From Utricularia gibba (taxonomy: Eukaryota; Plantae; Magnoliophyta): 64,000 nucleotides of DNA. Both the position numbers and the translations under genes were made by a program. Positions 16,038 through 46,141 of the stretch are shown piece by piece (positions within the stretch are counted from its first letter, which is position 1; each line of letters opens with the position of its first letter). The stretch is from assembly GCA_002189035.1 (NCBI GenBank), contig NEEC01000019.1, positions 1,736,001 to 1,800,000 of the forward strand, in the 5' to 3' direction. The notes under the pieces were generated by a model, which was not told the DNA's origin, made no database searches, and worked only from the letters and a program-made list of their open reading frames with translations.

Positions 16038-16286
16038 TTAGTCCTGAAACTTGACAAGGATTATGTTCTTCTTCTTACGCACACATTTGATCCTTCTGGG
16101 GCAATCCTCGGGGAGACAATGGAACTCATATACACGTCTACGGTTGGATGGCTCCACCACCATGATCCTCAGAAAGTTGCCGTGTGCCACTTTGGCTACG
16201 AATTGAGTCACATTCGGTACCACTTCCTGCTTGAACTGATACATCCCTTCTGTGTGTTTTGCAATCTCTATTTTTCCGATACTCAT
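16038..16286 (-). CDS. Small orphan-family protein (82 aa), putative stand-alone alpha-crystallin/HSP20-like domain; solo intact copy
   Basis: Open ORF MSIGKIEI...YQFKQEV...FVAKV...FLRIMVV...VYEFHCLPEDC..IKC..K.NIILVKF. Alignable to the ORFs at 29.8-42.1 kb, with the same GTGAAAATG start context, upstream TATATAAA and downstream motifs. Fold assignment is inference. Confidence 0.7.
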   Translation of the reverse strand: MSIGKIEIAKHTEGMYQFKQEVVPNVTQFVAKVAHGNFLRIMVVEPSNRRRVYEFHCLPEDCPRRIKCVRKKKNIILVKFQD

Positions 16287-24653: not shown

Positions 24654-25857
24654 CCTTCTTCCCCAGAAGCAAGAATAAACGAAAGCAGCAAGAACAGGAA
24701 TAACACCGCTTGGTTTTTCACAAAGGCTACCGCTCCTCTGTTTCTGTGATTCTTTGATTTCAGAAAGAGAGAGAGAGAGGCACAAAGTAAGGAGTCAGTG
24801 TGTGGGCATCGCAGAGAGGGGTGCCATTTGGGAGGGAGGGAGGAGGAACAATAATGCTGCCACGAATATATACGCCAACACCTAATTAATTATCCAATAA
24901 ATAATATAATTAAATAAATATCTCTCATTTTAAATTTACAATTTAAATTTCTTACATACACTCATCGGAATTTACAATTCATGCCTTTTCGAATAAGTTG
25001 TTTCACATGGGACGATGGAGGGTAAAAAAAAGGAAATAATGAAAAAGTAAAAACTTTTTAGGGGTAGAGCAACAGATGGTAAAAAACAACACTAATTTCT
25101 CCGTCTCTATCGCATAAACATGTACTATCGTCTGTGTCCCATCAACGTTGCGCCCATTCCATCAACAAATTCGAGGAACTGAAACGCGATGGACGGCCAG
25201 ATCTCACTCATTCAAATCCGACGGACTCCATGCTTACCAGCCACCAAGTCACAAACTTATTTTTCTAATAATAAATTTAAATATTTAAATTAATAATCGA
25301 AAAATGATTCAATTCTTGTTTTTGATGAGTATATTAAATTTATTACCTTAATTTTCTTTTTATTTTTTTTAAGTTTTTGAGGGATAAGGAGGCGCGTGGG
25401 GAACTGTAGGTTGGATGGGGGCGTGAAGGAGACTTGGCGAACACACGGGATCAAATGATAACGAGATTTCGAACTCAGGCCTGCCCCAGCAACAGGGAAC
25501 AAATTGACCAACGGACCCCGCCCACCGCCGTTAAAGACCCTACTAACCGCTCAGTTAACGGCGTTACAGTCCCCTGCCGTATCGTCTCAAATTCCGGTGC
25601 CGTCCAATCCAATCTCCTCTGCCTTTTAAAATCCCGAGTGTGTGTGTGATACACGCACAACCCACACCAAGTATCATTATTTTATTCAACTATGAGAGGC
25701 GCCAGGCGGGGACTATCGAGTACTGCTGCATCTCCGTATTCGCGGAGTTCATGAGTTGATTTTACTTTTCTTAGAAGCAATCATGAGTTCCCATTTGCCC
25801 CTCCTGCACTGACCAATGATATGCACTGTAAATGAGTCGACGTGGTACGCCGCAGAG

Positions 25858-27333: not shown

Positions 27334-27545
27334 CTTCGGCTTCTCCGCCCCCGTCTCGTCACCACAACCAATATTTGAATCGATCAGTGAGAAACAAAAC
27401 CCACTATAATATCCAGAGAAACGGGGAAATTGCCACATTTTTCAAAAGTACCTGGTTTTTATATTATTATTTTATGAAAATTAATGCTACATTCATACCT
27501 TTATTTTACAGTCAATGGCTTTCAAGAGGATTTCAAGTTACGAAC

Positions 27546-28853
27546 ATGTCGGTCGCTGGCGTCGCCGTGATTCTCCTCGCCGTGCTGTCGCTTGCCGCCG
27601 CCGAAATTCGCTTCTCAGAAGTAAGATCCGATCCCCGCCCAATAATTCCTTTTGACGAGTTCGGGTTCACTCCTCGCGGCCAGTTGGAACTGAACGTGAC
27701 CCATCTTTCCCTGTCGGGGTCTCCCGACCAGTCGGCGTTGGACAAAGTGGGATTCTTTCTCTGCACCAGGGGCTCCTGGATCCATGTGCTTCAGCAGATC
27801 GAGGACGCCGAGATCGGCTGCGTTCTCGAATCCGATGCTGTGCAAAAAGTCTTCACCTTCGATCAATTGCCCAGCCCTGAGCCTTCCGGATTCAATCACT
27901 TGAACGCCGAAACGGTTGCAGATCAATACACACTCGTTTTCGCCAACTGTCTCACGCAGTCGAAGGTCACGATGGACGTGCGATCGGCGACGTATAATTT
28001 GGAAGACGGCAAATCGAATCGCCGCGATTATCTCTCTGCCGGTAAAACCTTCGTACCCAGGTACTTCCTGCTTTCCATGGTCTATTTCGTTCTAGGTGGC
28101 ATTTGGATCGGTGTTCTGCACAAGAACAGGACCACCGTTTTTCGAATCCACTTCTTTATGTTGGCTGTTGCGCTCCTAAAAGCGGTGAATTTGCTCTGTG
28201 AGGCTGAGGATAAGTCGTACATCAAGCGAACCGGGTCTCCTCATGGCTGGGATATCCTTTTTTACATCTTCAGCTTCATGAAGGGGATAACTCTGTTCAC
28301 TGTGATCGTCTTGATCGGTACTGGGTGGTCGTTTCTGAAACCCCATCTTCAAGACAGAGAAAAGAAGGTCTTGATGGTCGTGATCCCTCTTCAAGTAGTA
28401 GCCAATGTGGCACAAGTTGCGATCGACGAGAGTGAACCCTTTGGCCAGGACTGGGCGACATGGAAGCAAGTCTTCCTGCTCGTGGATGTTGTCTGCTGTT
28501 GTGCAATCCTCTTCCCCATCGTCTGGTCCATCAAGAACTCACGGGAGGCCGCCAGAATTGATGGAAAAGCTGCAGTGAGCTTGATGAAGTTGACTCTCTT
28601 CAGGCAATACTACATCGTGGTTATCTGCTACATCTACTTCACAAGAGTTGCAGTCTATGCACTCGAAACCATCACCTCGTATCGATACCTGTGGACCGCC
28701 GTCGTCGCCGGAGAGTTTGCAACACTCGGATTTTATGTGTTCACAGGCTACAAGTTCAAACCTGAGGCCAACAATCCGTACCTCGCCGTTGACGATGAGG
28801 ACGAGGAGGCTGCCGCACAACAGTTCAAGCTTGAAGATGAATTTGAATTGTGA
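27546..28853 (+). CDS. GPR107/108-like lung seven-transmembrane receptor family (GOST) protein, intronless
   Basis: Signal peptide followed by AEIRFSEVRSD.RPIIPFDEFGF; seven hydrophobic segments with LIGTGWSFLKP.LQ.REKKVLM.VIPLQV and KLTLFRQYY motifs; acidic tail. Confidence 0.92.
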   Translation: MSVAGVAVILLAVLSLAAAEIRFSEVRSDPRPIIPFDEFGFTPRGQLELNVTHLSLSGSPDQSALDKVGFFLCTRGSWIHVLQQIEDAEIGCVLESDAVQKVFTFDQLPSPEPSGFNHLNAETVADQYTLVFANCLTQSKVTMDVRSATYNLEDGKSNRRDYLSAGKTFVPRYFLLSMVYFVLGGIWIGVLHKNRTTVFRIHFFMLAVALLKAVNLLCEAEDKSYIKRTGSPHGWDILFYIFSFMKGITLFTVIVLIGTGWSFLKPHLQDREKKVLMVVIPLQVVANVAQVAIDESEPFGQDWATWKQVFLLVDVVCCCAILFPIVWSIKNSREAARIDGKAAVSLMKLTLFRQYYIVVICYIYFTRVAVYALETITSYRYLWTAVVAGEFATLGFYVFTGYKFKPEANNPYLAVDDEDEEAAAQQFKLEDEFEL

Positions 28854-29768: not shown

Positions 29769-30059
29769 CTAAGAGCATTCACGGCCGATCCCAATACTCG
29801 AAGGGGTTTTCTGAACGATCTCAATCTGGACCACGATGAAGTTATCAATCTTAAACCATGATTTGATTATTCTGGAACAATCATTGGGGAGATAACAGAA
29901 CTTGTATTCATGTATATCCCCGCGCGGATTCACCACTGTGATTCGTAGAAGCTTGTTATCCAACACATGCGCCATGAACGTCACATCACCTTCCACCTCA
30001 AGCTTGAACTCATAAATGGACTCATTGGGTTTTGAAATCTCTATATTTCCAAGGATCAT
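29769..30059 (-). CDS. Orphan ACD/HSP20-like family, array copy 1 (intact, 96 aa)
   Basis: MILGNIEISKPNESIYEFKLEV...HEYKFCYLPNDCSRIIKSWFKIDNFIVVQIE; TATA-like box at ~30123-30129; homologous to the other copies. Confidence 0.72.
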   Translation of the reverse strand: MILGNIEISKPNESIYEFKLEVEGDVTFMAHVLDNKLLRITVVNPRGDIHEYKFCYLPNDCSRIIKSWFKIDNFIVVQIEIVQKTPSSIGIGRECS

Positions 30060-30344
30060 ATTCACCCCTTTCTTATTTTTTTCCTTGAAGATTTTGTGGT
30101 TTGTTGATAGGTTCATGCAACTTATATAACCATCATATTTTGCGAAATAATAACAAAAAATTCAAAATATTTATTAATAAGATATTAAATTATATCAGGT
30201 TTACCGAATTTTTGTAATCATTTTAAAATTTTTCCTAGAATATTGAAAAAGTTCCTTATATTCTGCTAAATCAAATTTAATGTTTTTAATAAAAATTTGT
30301 AAAAAAGTACATAAAATTGTATTTTATTCTGCTAAATTTGAAAA

Positions 30345-30700
30345 TCATGGAAAGGTGAGGCCAGTGGAACCCGAATTGGGCTACCCGTTGTTGGGCTTGA
30401 CGGCCGCCTACAGCAACGAAAGTGTTATCCCAATAAGCCCACGTCAGCCGTAGATGATCGCCGGAGTTTTTGCTCGTCGGTCCATAAAACTGAACACAGG
30501 CAACGTTTCGTACACCGTCCTCGAGAAGGCTACTACCACTTCACCAGATAGAATGCTCCTCTGCCGCAGATTTCGCGGTGAGCGTGAAGGATATCTCAAT
30601 CCCCGTGATCACTTCAAGGAGTCCTTCCACCACCGCCGCCACGGAGGCGCTGGTGCCGGAAATCAGCCAGAACCGCTCGTTCCTCCACGAAAAGGGTAGA
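30345..30700 (-). pseudogene. Duplicated 3' fragment of CSLD4 (with stop codon and 3' UTR), internally deleted
   Basis: 30290-30700 aligns to 42640-43190 (e.g. AAAGTACATAAAATTGT; TCATGG(A/G)AAGGTGA; GTTTCGTACACCGTCCTCGAGAAGGCTAC). Confidence 0.9.
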
Positions 30701-31317
30701 AACGTTTTAAGGTCAGTATAGAATATTTATATTTAAATTGAAATATATATGATTGTTTGATTGATTAATATATGAATATCAATTTTATATTATTATAATA
30801 GACATTTGATAACAAGGTATTAATATGTATAAATATAATGTAATTAATTATGTAAACAATTAATTGTATATAATGTTTGATATACGAGAATATAAATTTA
30901 AATATAAACGATATACATATAACTAGGTTTTCATCTATTTATATATATTATTCATATATTCAATAAATGAAGATGTGAATAGTATAATTATATTAAATTA
31001 ATATGCATATATTAATCAATCAAACAACGATATATATGTAAATTTATATATATAACATTTATACTTTCTTATCAAACAATATCTAACATACTCATTTTTT
31101 AAGTATATCATTGATATACACAAATAAAGTAAGTACTAGTTATGTGTATAACAATCATATATTAAAACATAATATACAATTGAATATGTATAATATATAC
31201 ACATTCAATTACATCATACTTAAACATATTAATAATTTACTATCGAAATGACACCAAGGTAATTAAGAATGCAGTATATTCCAAATACACTCAAAGTAGC
31301 TCAAACGGGAAGAACAT

Positions 31318-31445
31318 TCAGCGTCGGATCCCAGCATCGGAAGACGCATTTTGAGCGATCCCCACACCCTAAGAAGCACGTTCATCGAGGTTAAACTCGA
31401 CTACGACGAAGCCGTCAATCTTTTTGGTTGATTCAATTACGGAAA
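31318..31445 (-). pseudogene. Orphan ACD-like family relic (3' third only, premature stop)
   Basis: Reads IESTKKIDGFVVVEFNLDERAS*GVGIAQNASSDAGIRR*; abuts promoter-like sequence directly. Confidence 0.75.
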
Positions 31446-32234
31446 AGTTGCATAATTTTTGTATTCATTTTTAGGACATGCAATTCTTTTTGCTACTAAT
31501 ACAAAATAGTTATGTTGTATGGAGACGTTTAAAGAGAATCTGTTGAGTTATATAAAAAAGATTAAAATCAATTGAATATATTTAGAATTTGTAATTTCTA
31601 AATGAGGCAGCGAGTATAATAAAAGACTATTGGGATTCTTTTATGGCTTTTATATTGAGTAATTTTTTCTTTATTCTTAATTTTTTTAAATAGCGAAAAA
31701 AGGTTCATTAGCTCATTCTCTATTTAGACTCTATGGCTATGTTTAGAATTTTTTTGAATAATATATATATTACCTTTTTTTCTACGAAAACATTTCTTTT
31801 AAATCATTTTTTAAAAATAGTGACTACAAAGAATAGAATAGTTGATTGATTCAAAATTTATAATTTCCATATATAAGCTTCAAATTTGAATTCCGAAATT
31901 AAACTATAATTAGAAATTTAAGAATTTGACTGATAGGAGGAACACGATATACATAAAAAAATATGGATTATATTTTAATAAACTAATTCTAATCAATTAT
32001 TAATAATTTTTAATTTATTGTATATTTAATCATATCATTTAATTTTAATTTTGTCCATGTACTATTTTTTGATGTAATAAAGAAGGCTCCACCAATGAAC
32101 TGCTATTCGGCCAAGGAGTGTATTACAAGTCTTACAATTCTTGATGAAATATATGAAAAATGGTCATTCTCAATTAAAATTTTTTATCTGAATATGTGAG
32201 AAATTGAAAATACTAAGAATTTTGTAAATGACCC

Positions 32235-32355
32235 TTCGACCCCGTTTCGTACACTATCCTCGAGAAGGCTACCACCGCGGCGATGATGCTCACCATTCCG
32301 ATCACTATGTGCCGGAAATCAGCCGGAACTGCTCGTTTCTCCACGAAAAGAGTTG
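32235..32355 (-). pseudogene. Second CSLD4 3' fragment
   Basis: CCGTTTCGTACACTATCCTCGAGAAGGCTACCACCGCGGCGATGATGCTCACCATTCCGATCAC and TGCCGGAAATCAGCCGGAACTGCTCGTTTCTCCAC match CSLD4 42925-43190. Confidence 0.85.
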
Positions 32356-32515
32356 AAACGTTTTGAGATCATCGTGAATTTCACACAAGGTAATTAAGAA
32401 TTCAGCATATTCCAATGCACTGAAACATCAAAGCAGCTCAAACAAGAAGAAACTCTCAAAGCATGCAAAACCAGCAAATGAATCAGGAACCAAATAAGCA
32501 AACAAGGAAGAACGT

Positions 32516-32893
32516 TCAGAGTCTGAGCCCAGCATCCGAAGGCGCATTTTGAGCGACACGCGCACCCGAAGAGGCATTTTGAGCGATCTGCACACCGGAA
32601 GGCGCATTTTGAACCATCCCTACAGCCGAACCGGCATTTCCAGCGAGCTCAAACTCGACCACGATGAAATTGTCAACCTTTTTGGATGATTTGATCTTTC
32701 TGGTGCAATCCTTGGGGAGGGGACAAAACTTGTATTCATGAATATCGCGGCGGCTGTTCATCACATCGATCCGCAGAGCTTCACCCATCACCCTCGATGA
32801 AAACTTGGTCACAGAGTCTTTCACTTGAAGCTTGAACTCGTACCTGGATCCTGTGTACAGTAAACTCTCAATGTCTCCGATTATCATGTTCAT
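32516..32893 (-). CDS. Orphan ACD/HSP20-like family, array copy (intact, 125 aa) with three 10-aa C-terminal repeats
   Basis: MNMIIGDIESLLYTGSRYEFKLQV...HEYKFCPLPKDCTRKIKSSKKVDNFIVVEF followed by QNAPSGVQIA-QNASSGARVA-QNAPSDAGLRL. Confidence 0.75.
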   Translation of the reverse strand: MNMIIGDIESLLYTGSRYEFKLQVKDSVTKFSSRVMGEALRIDVMNSRRDIHEYKFCPLPKDCTRKIKSSKKVDNFIVVEFELAGNAGSAVGMVQNAPSGVQIAQNASSGARVAQNAPSDAGLRL

Positions 32894-33824
32894 TTTCGTC
32901 TCCTTCTTCGATTCTCTAGGCTTCTGTGGTTTCCTGCAACGTTGCTCCGGTTTATATAAGGGTTTCGTTTTGATAATATATTGGGTAATTACCAAAGAAA
33001 AAACAGAAATAATTGGAAATATTCATTGTTGAATATATTGATTATGGAAAATTTACAAAATTTTTGTATTTATTTTTAGAAAATATGCAATTTCTTGGAG
33101 ATTTCTTTTTGTTACTAATACAAAATAGTTATCTTATATGTAGACGTTTGAATTGAATCTGTTAAATAATATTAAAAAGATTAAAATCAATTAAATATAT
33201 TCAGAATTTGGTAATTTCCAAACATGGCAGCGATATTGGGATTCTTTTGTGGCTTTTATATTGAGTAATTTGTTATTTATTCTTATTTTTTAATATAAAA
33301 AAGTTCATTATCTCTTTCTCTACTTAGATGTTTAGAATTTTTTTGATTAATATAGATTACTTTTTTTTCTATGGAAACGTTTGATATTAATTTTTTTAAT
33401 CAATTTTAAAAAATAGTGACTATAAGGAATTGAATATTTGATTGATTCAAAATTTATAGTTTCCATATACATGTTCAAATTTGAATTCCGAAATTAAACT
33501 GTAATTAAAATTTAAGAATTTGATTGATAGGATGAGAACGAGATATATAAAATATGAATTATATTTGAAAAAACTAAGTTAAATAGATTATTAATTATTT
33601 ATAATTTATTTATTATTTTTTTATCATATTTTTTAATTTTAATTTTCTCGATGTGCTATTGTTTGATGTGTAATAAAGAAGATGCCGCCAATGAACTGGT
33701 GCACTTCACCTCGGATGTATTATAAATCTAGTTATCCTTAATAAAGTATGAAAAAAATATTATCCTTAATTAAAAATTTTTAATTTAGATAAAATGAGAG
33801 GGTGGACAATTTTGTAAATGATCG

Positions 33825-34095
33825 ATCCGGCCCGGTTTTGTACACTGTCCTCGAGAAGGCTGCTACCATGGCGATATGTTCACTATGCCGATCACTATGG
33901 GGAAATATGACATCCAGTAGCCCTTACAGCACCGCCGCTAAGTGGGTTGCTGGTGCCGGAAATGAGCCAGAACTGCTCGTTTCTCCACCGTTGCTCCCGC
34001 TCTACGCCGACCAATTCACTTCCAGAATGGCTAATCCGATGAGGCAGAGAACAGAGACAGTGCGTGGAGAAACCAGCAGACGATGAGAACAGAAA
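33825..34095 (-). pseudogene. Third CSLD4 3' fragment (longest upstream reach)
   Basis: CACCGCCGCTAAGTGGG..GCTGGTGCCGGAAATGAGCCAGAACTG and GGCTAATCCGATGAGGCAGAG match CSLD4 43130-43350, with deletions. Confidence 0.88.
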
Positions 34096-34506
34096 GAGGT
34101 AGTCTGTTGAAAGATATTATTTTGGGACTCAATGTTAAAATTCAAGATCTGATCGATAGAATAAGCATGCATGTATGTGAAATTTAAATATACAAAAAAA
34201 CATAAATATATTAGAAAAGATTAAATGTCACGGATAAACATGCACATGAAATTTAATTATACAAAAAAACATAAATATATTAGAAAAAATTAAATGTAAC
34301 TAATTAATCCTGATATTTAATTTTTTTATATATTTAATTAATTCATTTTCATTTATCGATTAGTATTATATATTATAACACATAAATATATTCCAAATAC
34401 TCAAAAGTAACACAAAACAAGAAGAAACTCTTGTTTAAGTACCGATCATGCAAAACAAACGTACTAATTAGGAATTGAATAAACAAACAAGGAAGAACTT
34501 TCACAT

Positions 34507-34690
34507 TCAGGGCTTCAGCTTGACCATGATCATGTTAATAATCTTTTTGACTGATTTGATCCTTGTTGAGCAATCATCCGGGAGAGTACAGAACTTGTGT
34601 TCATGTATATTCTCGCGCGAATTCTCCACCTCGATCCGCAGACGCATCCACACGGCAAAATTGAGTTTCATAAGTGGAGGCTGGGTTGGG
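34507..34690 (-). pseudogene. Orphan ACD-like family relic, 5'-truncated
   Basis: LRIEVENSRENIHEHKFCTLPDDCSTRIKSVKKIINMIMVKLKP*; the N-terminal strands are replaced by an AT-rich insertion. Confidence 0.75.
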
Positions 34691-34697
34691 TAACTCA

Positions 34698-35475
34698 CAG
34701 CTTGTTTGAAACCACATATATTCTATTAAATTCAATTCTATTCTTGTAAAATTGATTCTATATTTCAAACATGTATTTGATTATTTTCTATGAAAATCGA
34801 TTTTTGAAAATCAATTTAATTTTCAAAGAAACATGGTTGTGCAGCTTCTAATACAAACTTGTTTTTTTAAATTGATTTTATGAAATGAATTTACTATTAT
34901 AATCATTTATTAATACATAATTACAATTAATACCATTTTTTTAAAAATAAATACGAATTTGCATTTTTTAAAAAAATTTATTCATTCTACTTATATGGAT
35001 TAGGGTTTTACAAATTTTAATTAACAATATAAGAATAATTGATTTTAACAATCAAAATAAAATTTTTCTTTTCCCTTCTCAATGCATCATTTTTCGTTGC
35101 ACTAATGCAATGATTATTTCAGTTGGTAGCAATTTTCTGTTTCGGTAGTACAAGTCTTGGGTTCTTTTGTCGGGACCATCCTATGCCTTCTTTTGTGAAT
35201 TTCTCAAGTTATTTTTCATATGATTAGTTAATAGTTTGATAAATGTTAATGTTATATATATATATATATGTTTTATTTAAATAAATTTTAAAATATGATT
35301 ATTAATGGATAAATATATACTTAATTATAAAAATCACTTTTTATTTTTTCCACTCAAAACATTAATTAATTTTATAATAATCATTCTTAAAAAACACTTA
35401 TATATATATATATATATATCAATTAATTTTTGATTTTGTTAAAATCAATTTGAATTGATATTTCCAAACGTTGAC
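34698..35475. mobile_element. Possible PIF/Harbinger-type MITE remnant interrupting the 34.5 kb copy
   Basis: Weak GTTTG / CAAAC termini flanked by TCA on both sides; internal AAATCAATT/AATTGATTT motifs; AT-rich. Confidence 0.35.
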
Positions 35476-35724
35476 TCAATATGGTATTTACTCATTCTCT
35501 AGCCACTATCTCTCTAATACCTCTCTTCCCCCACGTGAAAAACCAGCAAACCAGAAGAAGATGAGAACAGAAACAAGTCGTCTGTTTCAATGGCCTATTT
35601 GGTGCGATAACCATGTAACTTTGAACAAATACATTCCAAACACTCAAAAGTAACACAAAACAAGAAGAAACTCCTGTTTAAGCACCGATCATGCAAAACA
35701 AACGCACTAATTAGGAACCTAGAA

Positions 35725-35772
35725 GAACTTTCACATTTAGGGCTTCACTCGACCACGATCATGTTGTTGAAA
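35725..35772 (-). pseudogene. Orphan ACD-like family relic (last codons plus 3' UTR block 35630-35725)
   Basis: GGGCTTCACTCGACCACGATCATGTT matches the end of the 34507 and 36097 copies. Confidence 0.6.
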
Positions 35773-36096
35773 TTCAGGATGTAATGGGTTGGGCGAGCGC
35801 AACATGTGAAACCCAAATATACAAAAAACGTAGATTACAATACAAAAAATTAAACCTAACCGATTACTTGTGATTTATAGTTTCTTATATACTTGATTAT
35901 TTTATTTTCATTTTTCAATATGAGATTGTGTATTATGACACATGTTAATAATCTTTTTTACAGATTTGAACAAATATATTCCAAACACTCAAAAGTAACA
36001 CAAAACAAGAAGAAACCCGTGTTTGAGTGTACTGGATCATGCAAAACAAACGCATTAAATAGGAACTGAATAAACAAACATGAAGAACTTTTACAT

Positions 36097-36250
36097 TCAG
36101 GGCTTCATCTCAACCACGATCATGTTAATAATCTTTTTGACAGATTTGATCTTTGTTGAGCAATCCTTTGGGAGAGTACACAACTTGTATTCATGGAGGA
36201 TTCCTTGTCTTTACAAATCTCTATGTTTCCAACAATAATTTTCTCTTCAA
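36097..36250 (-). pseudogene. Orphan ACD-like family copy with internal deletion, frameshift and no ATG
   Basis: KIIVGNIEICKDKES joins out of frame to LHEYKLCTLPKDCSTKIKSVKKIINMIVVEMKP*. Confidence 0.78.
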
Positions 36251-37488
36251 TCCTATGAATCTTTCGTGGCTGCTTCCTGCTATGATGATCTGATTTTATA
36301 TGTGTTACATTTTGTGAATATTTTTGGTAATTACCAAAAAAATCACACAAATTCAAAATATTTAATGATAAAAATATTTAATCATGGTAGTTTTACCGAA
36401 TTTTGTTATTTATTCTTAAATATTCTTAGAATAATGAATATTTTTCTTATTTAGAATACTGAAAAGTTACTTTTGTTATGAGTAAATGTGTGGAAATAAT
36501 ATTTTGAAAATATTAAAATCAATTAAATATATTTTAAGTCAGAATTTCTAATTTTTAAACATGGAAGCTATTATAATACAAATTGCCGGGACTCTTTTAT
36601 TAATTAAATTGAGTAATGGTTAAAGTTATTTAAAAGTCATTTGATAGTAGATTATAATACGTTTAAGTATAATATAATTGGATATATATAATATACGTGA
36701 TTATATATAATATTTTATATTTAAGAATAAAAGTCGTAATATGTGAGTATTATAAATATAACTAATTCAAAAAATGAGTATATGGGTTGTATAATCACAC
36801 AAAAATTGATATAAATATATTAGTTAATCAAACAACGGTTTATATATAAATTTGAGTATAAATATTCTATAATATACTATCAAATACGTTTTTAGAATTG
36901 TTTTCTATGTTTAGAATCTTTTTGCTCATATAGATTATGTTGTTGGGATATAATTTGTATTGATGTATTTTCATTTAACTTTAGTCAATGAGATTGTTCT
37001 AATAATATTCAATGTAATACATTAAAATAATTGTTTATAAGTATAAACAGTATATATTAACAATAGTTAATACAATTACTCAGAAAATATTTAAGACTCA
37101 TAAATATTACATGAAGTTTAATATTCAATATATAAAATTTACATTGAATATAAACATTCGACTCATTTATAATTTTAAAAAATTATTTACATGAAATAGT
37201 TTTAAAAGTTTATTGAATATATAATAAAAATAACATTATTTTTCATAATAATAACAATATTTGTATCAATATATTAATAAACTCAGTTGAATATATAACC
37301 AAAAATTAAAATATGATTTTAAAAAATATACCTTATACAATATTTTTTCATAAAATATTTTTATATAAGAACTGAAATTTTAAAATTAAATTCACAAATA
37401 TTGCTTATAAATTAATATATTTCACATAAAGTATAGTACAAACAAGAATATCAGCATCCAAGCAAATAAACACATGAAGGTATAAGCT

Positions 37489-37917
37489 TCAAATGGTCCC
37501 AATCCAATCCCAAATGCTCTCTTCACCCTTCTTCACAAAATCCAAATGAGCATTTCTAATGATCTCCGTTCGGGTTCGAGCGACCCCAGGATCCGTACCG
37601 GTGGTTGGAGCGATCGCGGGTTCCGTAACGGTGTTTGAACCGACCGAGGAATCTGTATCGGTGTTTGGATCGACCTTAAACTCGACGACGACGAAATTAT
37701 CAATCCTTTGGGCGGATTCGACGGTTCTGGAGCAGTCAATCGGGAGAGGAGCCAGCTTGAATTCATGTATATCGCGGCGCCGATTCACCACCTCGATTTC
37801 CAGAAATAGTTCATCTATGATATTCACTTTGATCTTGTGGGCATTATCTCTCACTTCAAGCTTGAATTGATATGTGGATTCATTGGGCTTTGTAGTTTCT
37901 ATCTCTCCGACGATCAT
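37489..37917 (-). CDS. Orphan ACD/HSP20-like family, array copy (intact, 142 aa) with Thr/Pro-rich repeat tail
   Basis: MIVGEIETTKPNESTYQFKLEV...HEFKLAPLPIDCSRTVESAQRIDNFVVVEF then DPNTDT-DSSVGSNTVT-EPAIAPTTGT-DPGVARTRT and an end ESIWDWIGTI. Confidence 0.75.
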   Translation of the reverse strand: MIVGEIETTKPNESTYQFKLEVRDNAHKIKVNIIDELFLEIEVVNRRRDIHEFKLAPLPIDCSRTVESAQRIDNFVVVEFKVDPNTDTDSSVGSNTVTEPAIAPTTGTDPGVARTRTEIIRNAHLDFVKKGEESIWDWIGTI

Positions 37918-38767
37918 TTTCACTGATTTTTTCTTCGATCCTTGAGGTGCTTGTTCATATGCTGATGTGATTTATATAAGAGTTATATTTTATGAATATG
38001 TTGCGTAATAAAATTCAAAACATTTCTGGATAAAGATATTAAATTATGAAAAATTTACAGCATTATTGTATTTATTTTCAAAGCTTTTACTCAATTTTAT
38101 TCCGAATATATTGTAATTTCTTTGAGAATTCTATTTATTATTGTATTACATGGAGGCGTTTAAAAATAATATTTTACATTAACTAAATATACATTTAATT
38201 CAGATAGAGTTAGACCCGAATACATCCTAGACGAGTTACGGGTTGGACCCATGGTTTTAGTTAAAGTACGGATCTATTGCGGTTCGAAACCACGGGTCAA
38301 AATTAAAAACTAAACCATAAATAATTTCAATCCACGGATCCAGTTATGAGTTTAACCCTTGTGATCAAAGTATTCAAAGCATGCAAACAATCATCTTATT
38401 AGGAACCAAATAAGCAAAGTAGGGTTAGTATATATTATTACTTTATCAGAATTTCGATTTTGCTATAATCAATTTTAGAAAAGTTTTTCCACATGCAACC
38501 ATAGTGTTCTTGATGATGCAGGTACACTACTGCATTGTAATTATATATTAGATTTACTTCATCAAGAAATTGTTATAATAGTAGTTGATGAGACTATAAA
38601 ACTTTGTATCTATAAATACTACAATAACCATGTAACATATAATTAGTATATTCCAAATACTCTTTCATACTAAAACATCATAGTTGCGTGACACAAGAAG
38701 AAGCCCTATTGTTTTAGCACTCAACAGATGCAAACAAACACAAGCATATTAATTAATTAGGAATATG

Positions 38768-38815
38768 GTTCAACGCTGAAGTTTGATGAGGATGACATAA
38801 TCTCTCTTTTTGAAT
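38768..38815 (-). pseudogene. Orphan ACD-like family relic (3' end only)
   Basis: TTCAACGCTGAAGTTTGATGAGGATGAC is homologous to the C-terminal codons of the 39344 copy; full 3' UTR block at 38620-38765. Confidence 0.55.
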
Positions 38816-39343
38816 ATGTTGTATAATTTTAAAAAAATAAATTCATAATATTTATTGGTAAAGATATTAAATGATGTGTTTTGTGTAAGTTCGTATTCAT
38901 TTTTAATATTTTATAGAATACTCAATTTTAGTTTGAATATTTTGTAATTTTTTATGTATTTTGTTTTGTTATTAATTTAAATTATTATTTTTATATGAAA
39001 CGTGTGAAAGGAGTCTTTTAACTTATTTTAAAAAGATTAATATCGATTAAATATATGCTTATATTTTAGCTATCATAACAATGTTTACAGAAATTCTTTT
39101 ATTGATTAAAATAGTTTTTTTAAACGTAACCATAATGTTCTTTATGACGTAAAACATAAAAACATTATCTCTGTAAATATTAAAATAACCATGTAATTAA
39201 TAATTAGTATATTTCAAATACTATAATATTACACCACGCGACACAAGAAGAAGAAACCCTATTGTTTTAGTTCTCAATACATGCACACAAACACAAGCAT
39301 CTTAATTGATTAGTAACTAAATAAATAAAGCAATTAAAAATAT

Positions 39344-39592
39344 TCAATGCTTAAGTTTGACGATAATGAAATTCTTTTTCTTTTTCACTTATTTGATCTT
39401 TTTCGGACAATGGGAGGGGAGACGTATGAACTTGTAGTCCCATTGAAGCTTCTCCAGATCCAGCACTTGGATCGAAAGAAGATCATCCAACACCTTGGCA
39501 TCGAACGTTATCACATTATCATCCACCTCAAGCTGGTATGCATAACTACAAATTTTTAGTGAACATACCCTCTGTATATTTCCCCGGCTCAT
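39344..39592 (-). pseudogene. Orphan ACD-like family copy, full length (82 codons) with one premature TAA at 39389-39391
   Basis: MSRGNIQ...YAYQLEVDDNVITFDAKVLDDLLSIQV...WDYKFIRLPSHCPKKIK*VKKKKNFIIVKLKH*. Confidence 0.82.
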
Positions 39593-40782
39593 TTTCACCT
39601 CTTTTTTCTAAAACTTGTGTGGTTTGTTGGTAGGTGGATGAAATATATATAAAGGTTAAGTTTTGGGATAATTTGAAAAGAAGAATTCAAAATATTTATT
39701 GAATTATGTTAGTTTGTGGGATTTTGTATTTATTTTTAACATTTTTTGGAATACTCAATTTAATATTTTGGTATATTTTGGTATATTTTGTTTTGTTAGT
39801 AATATAAATTACTTTTTTATATGTGTGAAAGTAATATTTTTTAATTATTCTAAAAATATTAAAATCAATTGCAGCTATCATAATAATGTTTACTGAAATT
39901 TTTATATTTCTCAAATTGAGTAATCTGTTATTTATTCTTAAAATTTTTTGCTATCTTCTGAATTTTTATTCTTTTTTTTTTCTATGAAAAATGTTTGAAA
40001 TAATATTTTAAAAATTTTGTGAATATGTTGCGTAATACAATTCAAAATATTTCTGGATAAAGATATTAAATTGTGACAAATATACAGAATATTTGTATTT
40101 ATTTTCAAAGCCTATGCTCAATTTTGTTTGGAATATATTGTAATTTCTTTGAGAATGATATTATATGGAGACGTTTGAAAATAATATTTTAAATTAACTA
40201 AATATACATTTAATTCAGATAGAGTTGGACCCACATCCATCTAGACGTGTTACAGGTTAGATCCATGGTTTTAGTTAAAATACGGATTTATTATGGTTCA
40301 AAACCCGTGGGTCAAAATTAAAAACCGAAGCGTAAATAGTTTCAACCCATGGATCCAATTATGAGTTTAACCCTTGTGATCAAAGTATTCAAAGCATGTA
40401 AATAAACATCTTTTTAGGAATCAAATAAGCAAAGCAAGGATAGTATATATTATTAATTCATGAGAATTTTCAATTTCGCTATAATCAATTTTAGAATAGT
40501 TTTTCCACATGTAATCATATTGTTCTTGATGATGCAGGTACACTACTGCATTGTAATTATATATTAGATTTACTTCATCAAGAAATTGTTATAATAGTAG
40601 TTGATGAGACTATAAAACTTTGTATCTATAAATACTACAATAACCATGTAACATATAATTAGTATATTCCAAATACTCTTTCATACTATAACATCATAGT
40701 AGCGTGACACAAGAAGGCCTATTGTTTTAGTACTCAATAGATGCAAACAAACACAAGCATCTTAATTAATTAGAAAGATGGT

Positions 40783-40830
40783 TCAATGCTGAAGTTTGAC
40801 GAGGATGACGTTATCTCTATTTTTTAATAT
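40783..40830 (-). pseudogene. Orphan ACD-like family relic (duplicate of the 38768 relic)
   Basis: TTCAATGCTGAAGTTTGACGAGGATGACG. Confidence 0.55.
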
Positions 40831-41303
40831 GTTGTATAATTTTAACAAAAGAAATTCATAATATTTATTGGTAAAGATATTAAATCATTTGTTTTGTGGA
40901 ATTTTTGTATTTATTTTTAATATTTTATGGAATACTCAATTTTAGTTTGAATATTTTGTAATTTTTTGTGTATTGTGTTTTGTTATTAATATAAATTACT
41001 TTTTTATATAGAAATGTATGAAAGTAGTCTATTAACTCATTTTAAAAAGATTAATATTGATTAAATATATGCTTATATTTTAGCTATCATAACAATGTTT
41101 ACAGAAATTCTTTTATTGATTAAAATAGTTTTTTTAAACGTAATCATAATGTTCTTTACGACGCAAAACATAAAAAACATTATCATTGCAAATATTACAA
41201 TAACCATGTAACTAATAATTAATATATTCCAAATACTATAACATCATAGTCACGCGACACAAGAAGAATAAATCCTATTGTTTTAGTACTCAATCGAAGC
41301 ACA

Positions 41304-41804
41304 CGTGATTGCGACTCGGCCGGTTAACCGGCGAGTCAAACCGGTTAACCGGTTTTCCTTGTCTCACCGGTTAACCGATTAAACGGGTATTGGTTTTTTA
41401 GGATTTTTTTGTTAAAAGCAGCCCTGATATTGATTATCTCAACTTGCAAGGTAATGATTGTTTATTTATAATACTATCTATGGTTCTTGGATAAACATTG
41501 CACAATATCAATTCTTAATTTTTCTTTTTTCAATGCTTGTTTTGTTTTTGCAATTGTATGTAAATGACATCTCAAATCAATGTATTTTTCTGATTTTTTA
41601 TGCTCAATGTTTGAGTTAATGAAAACTTAATAATAATGTTAATGTTTAGAGTTTTATGATTGAAGTTATTATGTTTGTAATTTATTCAATAATAATAATA
41701 ATAATATAAAATAATGAAAACTCAGAGTTTGACCGGTCAAACCGGTTTTTGAAACCGGATCAGTGGAGTACCGATCCGGTTTTGAAACCCGAGTCGCAAT
41801 CATA
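41304..41804. mobile_element. 501-bp non-autonomous hAT-type element (MITE)
   Basis: 14-bp perfect inverted repeat TGATTGCGACTCGG / CCGAGTCGCAATCA; degenerate 8-bp TSD GAAGCACA / CATGCACA; ACCGGTT subterminal repeats; the paralogous site at ~39275-39290 is empty. Confidence 0.85.
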
Positions 41805-41868
41805 CATGCACACAAACACAAGCATCTTAATTGATTAGTTACTAAATAAATAAAGTAATTAAGAAGAT

Positions 41869-42091
41869 TCAACGCTTAAGTTTGACGATAATGAAGTTCT
41901 TTTTCTTTTTCTGAGGAGAGAGGCATGAACTTGCAGTCCCATAGAAGGGTCTCCGGATCCACCACTTTGATCCGTAGAAGATCATCATATACCACCTTGG
42001 CATCGAAGATCTTCACATCATGATCCACCTCAAGCTGGAATGCATACTTGCAATTTTTTAGATCTGCAATCTGTATATTTCCCTTGCTCAT
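41869..42091 (-). pseudogene. Orphan ACD-like family copy with an internal deletion and frameshift near the C-terminus
   Basis: MSKGNIQ...YAFQLEVDHDVKIFDAKVVYDDLLRIKV...WDCKFMPL; the segment equivalent to HCPKKIKSV is missing and KKKKNFIIVKLKR* is out of frame. Confidence 0.8.
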
Positions 42092-42703
42092 TTTCACCTT
42101 TTTTTTTTCTGAAACTTGTGTGTGGTTTGTTGGTAGGTGGATGAAATATATATAAAGTTTGAAATTTGGGATAATTTTAAAAAAAAAAGAATTCAAAATA
42201 TTTAATGAACTATGTTAGTTTTTGGGATTTTTGTATTTATTTTTGTGTATTTTATTTTGTTAATAATACAAATTACTTTTTTATACTTGTGAAATTAATA
42301 TTTTTTAATTATTCTAAAAATATTAAAATCAATTGCAGCTATCATAATAATGTTTACTGAAATTTTTATATTACTCAAATTGAGTAATTTTTTATTTATT
42401 CTTAAAATTTTTTGATATCTTTTGAATTTTTATTCTTTTTTTCTATGAAAAATATTTGAAATAATATTTTAAAAATTTTGATTAAAATAAATTAAACATA
42501 TGTTTTATTCAGAATTCCCAGATTCCAAACATAGAAAAAAAAAGTCGAAATTCTGAAGACCCAATTTGTATTTCTTAGTGTAAATGTTTATCTAAAATTA
42601 TTTTAATATAAAAAAACATAAGTGAATAAAAACACTTTTTCAATAAAAATTTTTAAAAAAAGTACATAAAATTGTGTTTTATTCTGCTTAACTAGAAAAA
42701 AGA

Positions 42704-45700
42704 TCATGGGAAGGTGAAGCCTGAGGATCCCGGAGTGGGCTGGCCGTTGTTGGGGTTGACGGCCACCCAGAGCAACGAGAGTGTTATCGCAATAAGCCCA
42801 GACCAGACGTAGATGATCGTCGGAGTTTTAGCCTGTCGGCCCATGAGGCCTTTCGCGAATGGGTAGAGATGAGCCAGCACCCAGAAACTGAAGAAGGCGC
42901 CGCCGATGAACTTGCTCCACGCCGGCACCGTTTCGTACACCGTCCTCGAGAAGGCTACCACCATGGCGATGATGTTCACCATTCCGATCACAATGGGGGG
43001 TATCATGAGGGACGTCCATTTCACCAGATAGAGATCTGCATAGATGTCGTCCTCATCCTCCGCCGCGGATTTGGAGGTGAGGGTGAAGGAGATCTCTATC
43101 CCTGCGATCACTTTCAGGAGTCCTTGCACCACCGCTGCTAAGTGGGCGCTGGTGCCGGAAATGAGCCAGAACTGTTCGTTTCTCCACCATTGCTCGAGCT
43201 CCACGCCCGACCATTTGACTTCCAGGATGGCTAATCCGATGAGGCAGAGTGACATGCAGAGGAGGAGGACCAGGAATGTGACATCCAGATTCTGTACTAT
43301 GAAATACCCAGAGAACAGAGACAGTGCGGGGAGAAAGCAGTAGACGATGAGGAAGAAGGAGGTGAAGGGGTAGATCCCCACGTTCAGATACGCCAAGCGT
43401 TGGAGAAGCTTCAGATTCTTGCTGGCGAGAAAGGCGTTGTTTCTGGAGAAGAATATCTCGACAGAGCCCGTTGCCCATCTCAGAACCTGATGAAGCCTGT
43501 CTGTGAGATTGATCGGAGCAGAACCACGAAAAGCATCACGCTTGGTTACACAGTACACCGAGCGCCAGCCACGGTTGTGCATCCGGTAGCCGGTGACCAC
43601 ATCCTCCGTCACCGATCCATAGATCCATCCAACGCGATCGCCCCACTCTGTTTTGTCCTCGTACCAGCATGATATCACAGATACCGACTCCGCCACCGTA
43701 GTAGCATTGAGGGGCTGCCGGGGCGCTCTGAGTATTCCGGGGGGCCTTCCATATTTCACGGCGGGATGATCCGCGATGGGCCGCCCATGGAACTCTGCAA
43801 CAGGTATAGACTCCGCTAACATGGTAGAGTTCCCGAATCTCTTGGGTAGCAAATTGACATCCAAATCGGGATCAAAATCGGTTGCCTCCAGAGCATTCGT
43901 CTCTGATTTCTTTTCCAAGCTCAGCATTTTATCAACTTTCGGTGGCTCAAAGCCGTAGAGAGCAAATCTCCGGAACATGCAGCCAGTCCCGACGTACACC
44001 GGCCCTTGGAGGCCATCGAGGGCCCTCATGTTCCCATCGAAGAAGACAGTATTGTGATTAGCATATCGATCGGAAGGGTCGATACCCTCGAACCTCTGGG
44101 GAAATTGGATGTAGCAGATGTCTTCGCCGCCTCTGTCCATCATGAAACACATCCCTTCTCGAATAGCATTCGTGTTGTATATGTAATGATCGCAGTCAAG
44201 ATTGAGGATGAAGGGGCCATTAGAGAGGACTGCAGATGCTCGCACCAGAGCATTCATTGCCCCAGCTTTCTTGTTGTGGTCGTATCCGGGGCGCTTTTCT
44301 CGGGAGACGTAAACGAACATCGGCAAGCGTATGTCGACGTCGCTGAAGTCTATGAACTCCTCGTTTGAGCTTCCCATCAATGGGTTGCTACTGGGAGGCT
44401 TCAGCATCACCTGATAAACAGGGGAAGTGACTGATCAAGTGTACTTTTCAGGCGATGAGATTGCTGTTCTGTTGTACCTGGAGAATTCCGGCGTGGTCGC
44501 CTTTGGCATGCTCCCGTGAAGAAGGAGCCCAGGTACCAGGCCAATGTGTGCCGTCTGCCATCCAAGTTGCTTTGAGAACTTTTATAGGTTCCAGATTGCT
44601 GCCCCCACTCTCCCTCAGATTCTTTATCATCTTCATTTCTTCTCTTGCATTGAAAGCCTCTGATCTTCTCCGAATCGAATCAGGGAGCCCATTGATTCTG
44701 ACCTTAAATTCATCGTATTCCCTCTTCACCTTCCGCCTATCCTTCACAAAATCGAGTCTTTTCTTGTTCTTTGTTGGGTCGCCCTTTAGACTGAAATAAG
44801 TATCTGGATTCCGAGGTTCAATATCGTGCTTCCTGCAAAAAGGCACCCATAAATCTGCAAAGCTCGCTGCCTCCGCCATTGCCTCAAAGGTAAGAAGAGC
44901 TCCACCGTCATCAGAAAGATAGCACGACAGCTTCTCCACCGGGTAGTTAACGGCTAGAATCGACAGTATCGTGTTTGCGGTCACCAATGGCGGCTCCTTC
45001 TCAGGATCAGCAGTAGAAACAAAAAAATCCAATCCTGGAAGATCAGAGCGCCCTGTTGGATTGGAAGGTGATGGCATTTCGAACTTATCACGCAGCAGAT
45101 CCAGATCAGCAGACCGATTAACCGGATGAACCTTAGGAACCTGATCCAGAATCCAAGAAAACGCAAACCATATCTCGCATGTAACTGACATAAGCCATAG
45201 CCAGATTGCCTCTGTGTTGGGATGCCTTACTCTCCATGTCAAGAAGAAACCCATTAAAATCAACCTCGTCACAATCAAAAGCCTGTATGGGCTGATGATG
45301 CTGGTGGGCACCAGTATAACCCGACTGAGAGGCCTCCAGGGCTTATCAGATGTCTCCAGCATCCCCTGATGCATTTCGCCGTCGTCGTCTTCCCCGTCCT
45401 TCGGCCAATACGCATTCCCATATCCATAGGTTCCCTGTGTCGTCTCAAACAGCCATTTGTTATGGTCGAATTCACCATTCTGGTTCCTTTTCATTATAGA
45501 CATGTTGTGACTCTCCCTCTTTGGATTATTGGGTGCTGTCAGAGACAGTGCTCCCTTTGAGTAGTTGGGTATCTCGTTATCATCATCAAATTCATCAACT
45601 TTGTAGGGCTCCTTGCACCCCGGACAGAGCCCAGTGTCTTTGAAAGCGTCCATGTAGCAGTCTCTGCAAATTTTAAACCTGCATTCGCAGGGCACAATGT

Positions 45701-46141
45701 CGTCCCCTCTCTCGTCCTTCATCACATTGCCGTCACAGGCCGTCATTGCGCAGGAGGCACCTTTGGACCCCGCCATCTGGGGATGCCGAACCTCGGAGTC
45801 AATCACCTTGTCCATGAGATGAGCTCGTGTCACGCTGTTGAATCCCCCGTGAAAAGGGAGTTCGACACGTACTGCTCCTCCGCCTTGGTGGCGACGGAGG
45901 AATCCATCGGCTGGTTGTCCGGCGTGGGCGGAATGTGAACGGTGTAGTTCATGTAATCCCCGGAGAACTCTCCGGACATGTCCAGATCTTCCTGAGACAA
46001 GCTCACGTACCTCCCGCTGGAGGTCCTGCGAGCGAATTTCACCGTTTGGGCGTTGGATCCACGGTTGCCCCCTTGGGAGCTCTCCGTGGAGGAGCCACGT
46101 AATGATTTCTTGGGAGGCGGTTGGCTTGTTGCAGTCGCCAT
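42704..46141 (-). CDS. CSLD4: Cellulose synthase-like D, CSLD4-type; one intron (44411-44477); one -1 frameshift at C5 45844-45848
   Basis: [34 protein letters not shown]-like Cys region, DDG / DCD / TED / QVLRW catalytic motifs and 8-TM layout; adding one base restores [11 protein letters not shown]. Confidence 0.93.

What the first reader, a model, noticed from the sequence alone, without database searches (positions are those of the whole stretch)
29769..42091. Tandem array of an unannotated micro-protein family resembling stand-alone alpha-crystallin (HSP20-like) domains
Seen: about 11 head-to-tail, minus-strand, intronless copies or relics in 12.3 kb (3 intact here plus one at 16 kb), sharing I(E/Q)I...Y.F.LEV...F.A.V....L.I.V.....H(E/D)YKF..LP.DC...IKS..K..NFIVV. 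Knowledge: the alpha-crystallin domain has beta2-3-4-5-(6)-7-8-9 strands with LP.N(A/C) before beta8; RTM2/SLI1-type phloem ACD proteins have a short beta5-beta7 loop and P..C there. Inference: these ~80-aa cores fit an ACD (or CS/p23-like) sandwich with no N-terminal arm, no beta6 and no IXI tail, i.e. minimal domain-only proteins under birth-and-death evolution. They could be decoys, dominant-negative sHSP modulators or defence/recognition factors.
Basis: partly seen in the sequence, partly recalled or inferred. Interest (0 to 1): 0.85.

Follow-up and report, generated by a model that had tools for sequence, protein, structure and literature searches.

The report
Orphan mini alpha-crystallin gene array
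A plant genome holds a local cluster of tiny intronless genes and decayed copies that no sequence database recognises, yet they are confidently predicted to fold into the bare core domain of small heat-shock proteins. It is not yet known whether any copy is expressed.

Summary
On the minus strand there are four intact copies (16038-16286, 29769-30059, 32516-32893, 37489-37917) and five clear relics (about 31.3, 34.5, 36.1, 39.4 and 41.9 kb). That gives eight units inside 29.7-42.1 kb, not eleven. Two or three further traces are too faint to count.

The fold inference also holds. AlphaFold2 gives pLDDT about 96 over residues 1-80, forming seven strands. Foldseek, VIA-align (Z 10.8 to wheat HSP16.9, 10.3 to the pea HSP18.1 core), an unbiased PDB scan, AFDB and the ESM Atlas all return small heat-shock or alpha-crystallin domains first. 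CS/p23 domains come second, at Z about 8.5.

No sequence method links the family to HSP20: Pfam, a PDB profile search and hhalign against IbpA/B all failed. An exhaustive HMMER scan of 1.84 billion representative proteins found only the window's own protein.

Each unit carries a conserved TATA box 51-71 nt upstream of its ATG. The array grew by unequal crossing-over, which dragged along pieces of the neighbouring CSLD 3' exon.

Purifying selection is weak (dN/dS 0.33-0.84). No transcript was seen in three small RNA runs.

Verdict: a lineage-restricted, fast-evolving family of minimal stand-alone ACD-fold genes. It is a new variant of a known kind, and its function and expression are unproven.

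The parts
16038..16286 (-). Intact outlying copy, 82 aa. It is the bare domain with no tail.
   Evidence: TATA box at 16330-16337.
29769..30059 (-). Intact copy, 96 aa from the conserved Met. Its tail contains I-G-I.
   Evidence: AF2 model m769f5446d2c1 has pLDDT 96 over residues 1-80. The TATA box at 30122-30128 lies upstream of, and too close to, the 30116 ATG, so 30059 is the likely start.
30283..30688 (.). Pseudogene fragment of the CSLD 3' exon, co-duplicated with the c29769 unit.
   Evidence: 83% identical to 42637-43187.
31324..31506 (-). Relic: last strands plus a QNA-rich tail, with stop codons.
32242..32344 (.). Second CSLD 3' exon fragment.
32516..32893 (-). Intact copy, 125 aa. Core followed by a low-complexity tail of AQNA(P/S)S repeats.
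   Evidence: TATA box at 32951-32958.
33827..34100 (.). Third CSLD 3' exon fragment.
34510..34698 (-). Relic: C-terminal half only (strands 5-9).
36103..36242 (-). Relic: N-terminal stub joined out of frame to the C-terminal third.
37489..37917 (-). Intact copy, 142 aa (= P0001). Core, then a disordered linker, then a predicted C-terminal helix.
   Evidence: AF2 model m77b43e66951d. TATA box at 37971-37978.
39350..39592 (-). Relic with one in-frame stop codon (39389-39391).
41879..42091 (-). Relic next to CSLD. The N-terminal two thirds are intact; a 26-nt deletion removes the LP.DC region.
42704..46141 (-). Neighbouring CSLD-type cellulose synthase gene. Its 3' exon is the source of the three fragments.

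Best explanation
**What it is.** This is a lineage-restricted family of intronless plant genes. Each encodes little more than one HSP20-like (alpha-crystallin-type) beta-sandwich of about 80 residues, with or without a variable disordered tail.

**Shown:**
- The family, its four intact and five broken copies, and its confidently predicted seven-strand ACD-type fold.
- A conserved TATA-containing upstream region for each unit.
- Growth of the array by unequal crossing-over beside the CSLD gene.
- Invariance of the hydrophobic core while other positions change fast.
- Absence of any sequence relative in very large protein libraries.

**Inferred:**
- The intact copies are, or recently were, expressed as soluble cytosolic or nuclear proteins. 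They have no signal peptide and no membrane segment.
- They work as small protein-binding modules. One possibility is that they hold exposed hydrophobic segments. Another is that they dock I/V-x-I/V-type peptides in the groove between strands 4 and 8, as isolated ACDs do, and so modulate sHSPs or other partners.
- They do not build the large oligomers that need an N-terminal arm and a beta6 loop.
- The fast turnover and variable surfaces fit a partner that itself changes, whether biotic or reproductive. This last step is speculation.
For: **Family and copies:**

**Fold:**
- AF2 pLDDT 96 over residues 1-80 of c29769 and 93-97 over the core of c37489.
- VIA-align: Z 10.8 (1gme), 10.3 (5ds2, rmsd 2.3 A over 77 residues).
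- The top 14 of an unbiased scan of 48,161 PDB chains are all sHSPs.
- AFDB Swiss-Prot and AFDB clusters return only sHSP/SHSP-domain proteins, including an RTM2-like entry at TM 0.73.
- ESM Atlas: TM 0.72-0.74 to clusters that are 100% PF00011.
- 53 of the 100 nearest named language-model clusters carry PF00011.

**Evidence that these are genes:**
- The coding frame has 0 stops, against 3-11 in the other two frames. GC3 is 0.52-0.62 in DNA of 26-29% GC.
- Simulated neutral drift at 20% divergence keeps the frame open only about 10% of the time per lineage.
- dN/dS is 0.33 (Fisher p 3e-4) and 0.52 (p 0.027) for two intact pairs.
- The invariant residues are mostly buried hydrophobics spaced alternately along the strands.
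- A TATA box lies 51-71 nt upstream of every ATG, in the context GTGAAAATGA. A second conserved block lies 150-190 nt upstream and is shared even by the 16-kb copy.

**Duplication mechanism:** three CSLD 3' exon fragments with shared deletion breakpoints sit upstream of array units.

**Orphan status:**
Against: - No contig of three RNA runs of this species lay on 32400-38100.
- The single database record of a family protein comes from a contig that includes the promoter and flanks, so it is genomic DNA.
- Purifying selection is weak. dN/dS is 0.63-0.84 and not significant for four of the six intact pairs, and differences by codon position are nearly flat at 0.38/0.31/0.39.
- Five of nine copies are dead.
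- No profile method links the family to HSP20 or CS, so convergence on a common sandwich cannot be formally excluded.
- No canonical heat-shock element lies in the promoters.
- Binding and chaperone-like action are pure inference.
Confidence: 0.6

Rival explanations
1. A dying or dead array. The copies descend from one real ACD gene, but none is expressed today. The four open frames are survivors by chance and by youth.
For: - Five of nine copies are broken.
- dN/dS is near 1 for many pairs, and the codon-position profile is flat.
- No RNA contigs were laid.
- No gene model exists in public protein sets apart from one call on a DNA contig.
Against: - Four frames stay open at 35-40% pairwise nucleotide divergence. 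Each has about a 10% chance of this under neutral substitution alone, before counting indels.
- There is a significant deficit of non-synonymous change in two pairs.
- The TATA box and start context are conserved even in the distant 16-kb copy.
- The fold signal remains intact.
Confidence: 0.22
2. The domain is functionally a CS/p23-type module rather than an ACD. It would be a free-standing HSP90-binding co-chaperone-like domain that could compete with SGT1 or p23.
For: - It has seven strands and no beta6 loop, as CS domains do.
- CS domains match at Z 8.4-8.7 for Sgt1, 8.2 for NudC-like and 7.3 for p23.
- Some language-model neighbour clusters mix PF00011 with PF04969.
Against: - ACDs score 1.5-2 Z units higher and fill the first 14 ranks.
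- All four rows returned by the Atlas fold search carry PF00011 (92-100% of members) and none carries PF04969.
- By eye, the spacing of the LP..(S)...N-hydrophobic motif resembles the sHSP beta7-beta9 signature more than the CS one. This rests on my own knowledge and was not tested statistically.
- There is no Pfam CS hit.
Confidence: 0.12
3. The units are exons of one long multi-ACD gene, like the plant class XI ACD proteins that have several domains (PMC4814718). Alternatively, they are gene fragments carried by a transposon such as a Pack-MULE or Helitron.
For: - The units are head to tail on one strand.
- Fragments of another gene (CSLD) lie between them.
- A MULE transposase lies in the window at 56954-58405.
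Against: - Each unit has its own TATA box, ATG in a conserved context and stop codon, and the tails differ.
- The CSLD fragments come from the gene that directly borders the array and keep its orientation, as unequal crossing-over predicts.
- I did not look for terminal inverted repeats at the unit borders (asked for direct repeats only). No transposon protein matches the family.
Confidence: 0.05

Closest known systems
Small heat-shock proteins / HSP20 family (Pfam PF00011), e.g. wheat HSP16.9 (1gme) and pea HSP18.1 core (5ds2)
   Same: - Same beta-sandwich. Z 10.3-10.8, with rmsd 2.3-3.3 A over 77-81 of about 80 core residues.
- By eye, a similar late motif: L-P-x-D ... I-K-S ... N-hydrophobic. 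This is my own knowledge.
- Three copies have an I/V-G-x motif where the sHSP I-x-I anchor sits.
   Different: - No N-terminal region at all.
- The beta5-beta7 turn is 4-6 residues, not the beta6 loop used for plant sHSP dimers.
- 82-142 aa.
- Not recognised by the Pfam HSP20 model or by profile searches.
- No heat-shock elements.
Plant 'uncharacterized ACD proteins' (UAP classes I-XI; Bondino et al. 2012, as summarised in PMC4814718), including tomato SlAcd11.3-CIX (109 aa, intronless)
   Same: - ACD proteins outside the classical sHSP classes.
- Some are small and intronless, and some are lineage-restricted.
- A tested UAP (SlAcd15.7-CI) lacked holdase activity (PMC4814718).
   Different: - UAPs were collected with ACD HMMs, which do not see this family.
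- At 82-96 aa, two members here are shorter than the shortest tomato entry.
- No relative was found in any other proteome.
RTM2 and SLI1, phloem HSP20-like resistance proteins of Arabidopsis (PMC7077274)
   Same: - ACD-type domain at the N-terminus with no classical N-terminal arm.
- An RTM2-like AFDB cluster is among the best structural matches, at TM 0.73.
- Precedent for ACD proteins acting in biotic defence.
   Different: - RTM2 and SLI1 carry a transmembrane domain and long extensions (PMC7077274).
- The proteins here have no hydrophobic segment.
- Sequence relationship could not be tested.
CS domains of p23, SGT1 and NudC (Pfam PF04969)
   Same: Seven-strand sandwich of the same superfamily without a beta6 loop. 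Z 7.3-8.7.
   Different: - Lower scores than ACDs.
- No Pfam CS hit.
- HSP90 binding is unknown.
C. elegans HSP12 family, the smallest classical sHSPs at about 110 aa (my own knowledge, not checked here)
   Same: Near-minimal ACD proteins with very short arms. They are reported to form small oligomers and to have little chaperone activity in vitro.
   Different: - They are still recognisable HSP20 members and keep a short N-terminal arm.
- They are animal genes.
- They do not form an orphan tandem array.

Membership tests
HSP20 / alpha-crystallin domain (PF00011) | Beta-sandwich of the ACD type (strands 2-9) | tested here: met
   AF2 pLDDT 93-97 over the core. sHSPs fill the top ranks in Foldseek PDB, AFDB, VIA-align (Z up to 10.8), the wide PDB scan and the Atlas.
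HSP20 / alpha-crystallin domain (PF00011) | Match to the family's sequence profile | tested here: not met
   - No PF00011 hit at E <= 10 for four intact copies.
- No sHSP in a PDB profile search at E <= 10.
- hhalign against IbpA/IbpB gave probability 0.35%.
- Only language-model features point to HSP20, at scores 0.78-0.86, which is a lead only.
HSP20 / alpha-crystallin domain (PF00011) | Variable N-terminal region used for client binding and oligomer assembly | tested here: not met
   The first strand starts at residue 7 and residue 2 already forms a beta bridge.
HSP20 / alpha-crystallin domain (PF00011) | Beta6-bearing loop (plant and bacterial strand-swapped dimer) or long beta6+7 strand (animal dimer) | tested here: not met
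   Only 4-6 residues lie between the strands ending at 43 and starting at 50. The mode of dimerisation could not be modelled.
HSP20 / alpha-crystallin domain (PF00011) | C-terminal I/V-x-I/V anchoring motif | tested here: inconclusive
   At one aligned position 7-9 residues after the last strand there is I-G-I in c29769, V-G-M in c32516 and V-G-S in c37489. The 16-kb copy has no tail. The tail has low pLDDT.
HSP20 / alpha-crystallin domain (PF00011) | Heat-shock elements in the promoter (typical of classical sHSP genes, though not a requirement for the domain family) | tested here: not met
   The three-unit HSE pattern with up to 1 mismatch gave 26 matches against 32.5 expected in the window. 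None lies within 230 nt upstream of an intact copy.
HSP20 / alpha-crystallin domain (PF00011) | ATP-independent holdase activity and oligomer formation | not testable with these tools
   Needs recombinant protein.
CS domain (PF04969) | Seven-strand CS sandwich and match to the CS profile | tested here: inconclusive
   The fold matches at Z 7.3-8.7, below ACDs. There is no Pfam CS hit.
CS domain (PF04969) | Binding to HSP90 | not testable with these tools
   No multimer modelling or assay was available.
RTM2/SLI1-type HSP20-like proteins | ACD followed by a long extension with a transmembrane domain (PMC7077274) | tested here: not met
   The tails are absent, low-complexity polar, or a predicted amphipathic helix. 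None has a hydrophobic stretch.

The most novel reading that the evidence does not exclude
A plant lineage has evolved a new class of free-standing 80-residue alpha-crystallin domains that have diverged beyond sequence recognition. The class is kept as a rapidly turning-over tandem array. Its members would act as diffusible 'groove-only' modules: they would cap or compete for I-x-I-type motifs of sHSPs or other partners, or bind pathogen or herbivore proteins, with the variable surfaces and tails setting specificity. They would be the smallest natural ACD proteins known, and a natural counterpart of the engineered ACD-only constructs used in chaperone research.
Probability: 0.3. Interest if true: 0.65.

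Novelty: new variant of a known kind. Interest (0 to 1): 0.45.

Why it matters
- If expressed, these would be the shortest natural proteins with an alpha-crystallin-type fold. They would lack both arms and the dimer loop that define how sHSPs assemble. That makes them a natural test of what the bare domain can do in a cell.
- They show how a very old domain can drift out of reach of every sequence profile while remaining obvious to structure prediction. This matters for annotating plant 'orphan' genes.
- The array gives a clean local record of birth and death by unequal crossing-over, because fragments of the neighbouring CSLD gene mark the duplicated units.
- If they are not expressed, the finding is an ordinary decaying gene cluster.

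Tried and rejected
- **Pfam** on four intact copies at E <= 10 gave only chance hits (SH2_2, SEN1_barrel, DBD_Tnp_Mut at E about 0.1).
- **Word-indexed search** of 5.8 billion proteins found only the window's own protein.
- **Exhaustive HMMER** on 1.84 billion representatives gave 14 further hits. The three I inspected (P0002, P0004, P0008) are long repeat proteins; the other eleven are 777-3313 aa, and ten of them match only in short stretches. I judge them spurious, matching only a short motif like 'Y-Q-F-Q-L-E-V-T-D'.
- **Metagenome scan** found no relative.
- **PDB profile search** gave one chance hit, to ribosomal protein L35.
- **hhalign against IbpA/IbpB** failed, at probability 0.35% and in the wrong register.
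- **Attempt to deepen the sHSP profile.** I searched with IbpA/B, but it returned only near-identical enterobacterial proteins, so I did not build a wider profile. That search was poor value.
- **First language-model search** with c29769 against all clusters was uninformative, with a best score of 0.54.
- **Expression.** Both run searches and the one read-laying run gave no RNA support.
- **Gene conversion** as the cause of the over-diverged coding region in the 39.4/41.9-kb pair: I saw no clear tracts. The 39.4-kb copy simply carries more private changes.
- **Transposon capture and a single multi-exon gene:** both rejected, for the reasons given under the rival explanations.
- **Heat-shock elements:** none found.

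Full report
**Setting.** The window is plant nuclear DNA and is gene-dense, with AT-rich spacers of 26-29% GC. Genes confirmed by Pfam are:
- a PIN-type carrier (12455-14083, minus strand);
- a GRAS/DELLA gene (22882-24785, minus);
- a CAND6/7-GOST seven-helix protein (27375-28853, plus);
- a CSLD-type cellulose synthase (42704-46141, minus);
- a MULE transposase (56954-58405, minus).

A MIR159 precursor lies at 1396-1591. Earlier notes of this scan call the genome a Lamiales plant; I did not check that.

**Observation.** tblastn with three intact copies and a six-frame profile search find the family only on the minus strand.

The four intact copies are at 16038-16286 (82 aa), 29769-30059 (96 aa), 32516-32893 (125 aa) and 37489-37917 (142 aa). 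The five clear relics are at 31324-31506, 34510-34698, 36103-36242, 39350-39592 (one stop) and 41879-42091 (26-nt deletion).

That gives eight units in the 12.3 kb, not eleven. Two or three more traces are not significant. The intact copies are 44-51% identical to c29769. They share 18 invariant residues, mostly alternating hydrophobics plus G4, E7, K19, P58, D60, C61, R63 and N73.

**Fold.** AlphaFold2 was run on a nine-row alignment of the window's own copies.
- For c29769 it gave mean pLDDT 89.8 and pTM 0.77, with 96-97 over residues 1-80 and seven strands.
- For c37489 it gave the same core (93-97), then a disordered linker and a moderately confident C-terminal helix at residues 116-139.

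The structure searches all agree.
- Foldseek against the PDB: 49 of the first 50 hits are sHSP/ACD chains, and the exception is the CS domain of Sgt1 at rank 26.
- AFDB Swiss-Prot: plant, bacterial and animal sHSPs at TM 0.53-0.70.
- AFDB clusters: SHSP-domain proteins, including an RTM2-like entry at TM 0.73.
- VIA-align: Z 10.8 to wheat HSP16.9, and 10.3 to the pea HSP18.1 core at rmsd 2.3 A over 77 residues.
- A scan of 48,161 PDB representatives that does not depend on Foldseek: sHSPs in the first 14 places (Z 10.2-8.6), then CS domains (Sgt1 8.5, p23 7.3).
- ESM Atlas by shape: all four rows returned carry PF00011 (in 92-100% of members), at TM 0.66-0.74.
- Language-model features of the core sequence alone: 53 of the 100 nearest named clusters carry PF00011, at scores that count only as leads.

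The fold is therefore HSP20-like, closer to ACD than to CS. It has no N-terminal arm and no beta6 loop.

**Sequence orphan.** No sequence method reaches a known family.
- Pfam gives nothing.
- The PDB profile search gives nothing.
- hhalign against E. coli IbpA/IbpB fails.
- A word-indexed search of 5.8 billion proteins finds only P0001, which is the window's own 142-aa copy.
- An exhaustive HMMER scan of 1.84 billion representatives adds only long proteins; the three I inspected are repeat proteins that match a short hairpin motif.
- A metagenome scan finds none.

P0001 was called on one 1048-nt Logan contig that is 100% collinear with 37052-38099. That stretch includes the promoter and flanks, so the contig is genomic DNA.

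**Are they genes?**

Evidence for:
- The frame is open in four copies, while the other two frames hold 3-11 stops. GC3 is 0.52-0.62 in AT-rich surroundings.
- Simulated neutral substitution at 20% per lineage keeps the frame open about one time in ten.
- dN/dS is 0.33 (p 3e-4) and 0.52 (p 0.027) for two intact pairs.
- Every unit has a TATA box 51-71 nt upstream of an ATG in the context GTGAAAATGA. A second conserved block lies 150-190 nt upstream and is shared even by the 16-kb copy.
- In c29769 the TATA box sits only 6 nt upstream of the longer ORF's ATG (30116), so the conserved Met at 30059 is the likely start.

Evidence against:
- dN/dS is 0.63-0.84 and not significant for the other four intact pairs, and differences by codon position are nearly flat.
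- Five of nine copies are dead.
- No contig from three small RNA runs lay on 32400-38100.

Expression is therefore open.

**How the array grew.** Three fragments of the CSLD 3' exon lie upstream of array units, at 30283-30688, 32242-32344 and 33827-34100. They keep the orientation of the parent gene and share deletion breakpoints. They are 83% identical to the parent and 75-82% identical to each other. The unit next to CSLD was therefore copied together with the end of CSLD, and the copies were copied again. This is unequal crossing-over, not transposition. Flanking repeats confirm units of 1.6-3.2 kb. A DNA run labelled as the same species holds the array with 1.5-3% differences.

**An unexplained detail.** The youngest pair is the two relics at 39.4 and 41.9 kb. 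Their coding part differs at 19.6% of sites and their flanks at 8.8% (Fisher p 6e-5). Both synonymous and non-synonymous sites are raised (pS 0.29, pN 0.25), so this is not a clean signature of positive selection. I saw no conversion tracts, and the 39.4-kb copy carries more private changes (19 against 9). The coding part is much richer in G+C than the flanks (43% against 18-26%), so faster decay of G+C-rich DNA is a simple candidate. It is untested.

**Mechanism.** The shown and inferred steps are listed under the best explanation. I think the intact copies most likely encode soluble, bare ACD modules that bind partners through the sandwich edges and the strand 4/8 groove. They would not form sHSP-type large oligomers, because the arm and the beta6 loop are missing. 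Three tails carry an I/V-G-x motif where sHSPs have their I-x-I anchor. This hints at self-association or association with sHSPs. No heat-shock elements were found, so heat induction of the classical kind is unlikely.

**Comparison with known families.** The closest are:
- classical sHSPs: same fold, different architecture;
- the heterogeneous plant 'uncharacterized ACD proteins', whose shortest tomato member has 109 aa (PMC4814718);
- RTM2 and SLI1, which add a membrane domain (PMC7077274);
- CS domains.

The family meets the fold criterion for HSP20 and fails the sequence-profile, arm and loop criteria. I therefore file it as a new, minimal, sequence-orphan variant of the HSP20-like superfamily, not as a member of PF00011.

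**Verdict.** The array is real and the fold call is right. The finding is moderately interesting. Its value depends on showing expression.

Noticed in passing
window 38943-40021 versus 40957-42480: In the youngest unit pair, the coding part differs at 19.6% of sites and the flanks at 8.8% (p 6e-5). Both synonymous and non-synonymous sites are raised, and no conversion tracts were seen. The cause is unexplained; faster decay of the G+C-richer coding DNA is a candidate.
   Followed up: partly
window 41307-41757: The unit next to CSLD has about 450 extra bases that its sister unit at 39.3 kb lacks. This may be a small inserted element. It holds a 67-aa ORF (41669-41872) with no Pfam match.
   Followed up: no
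window 22882-24785: The GRAS/DELLA gene is split into two overlapping ORFs in different frames (22882-23709 and 23586-24785). The break falls inside the GRAS domain, near '...[11 protein letters not shown]'. It is either a frameshifted pseudogene or an assembly error. The DELLA motif region also looks altered.
   Followed up: no
window 1396-1591: A MIR159 precursor on the plus strand, full-length match to Rfam RF00638 (91.8 bits, E 1.7e-18).
   Followed up: no
window 56954-58405: An intact-looking MULE transposase ORF of 483 aa with MULE and MuDR DNA-binding domains. It lies 15 kb from the array and I found no link to it.
   Followed up: no
window 32400-38100 (run X4): A DNA run labelled as the same species carries the array. 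The long contig pieces differ by 1.5-3%, and most of the laid contigs are only 90-95% alike. There are also several short-sided joints between paralogous units. This may reflect copy-number differences between accessions, or cross-mapping.
   Followed up: no
window 32516-32640 and 31324-31365: The tail of c32516 is made of three AQNA(P/S)S(G/D)-like repeats, and the relic at 31.3 kb carries the same kind of tail. The two units therefore share a recent ancestor, and tails are gained by local repeat growth.
   Followed up: no
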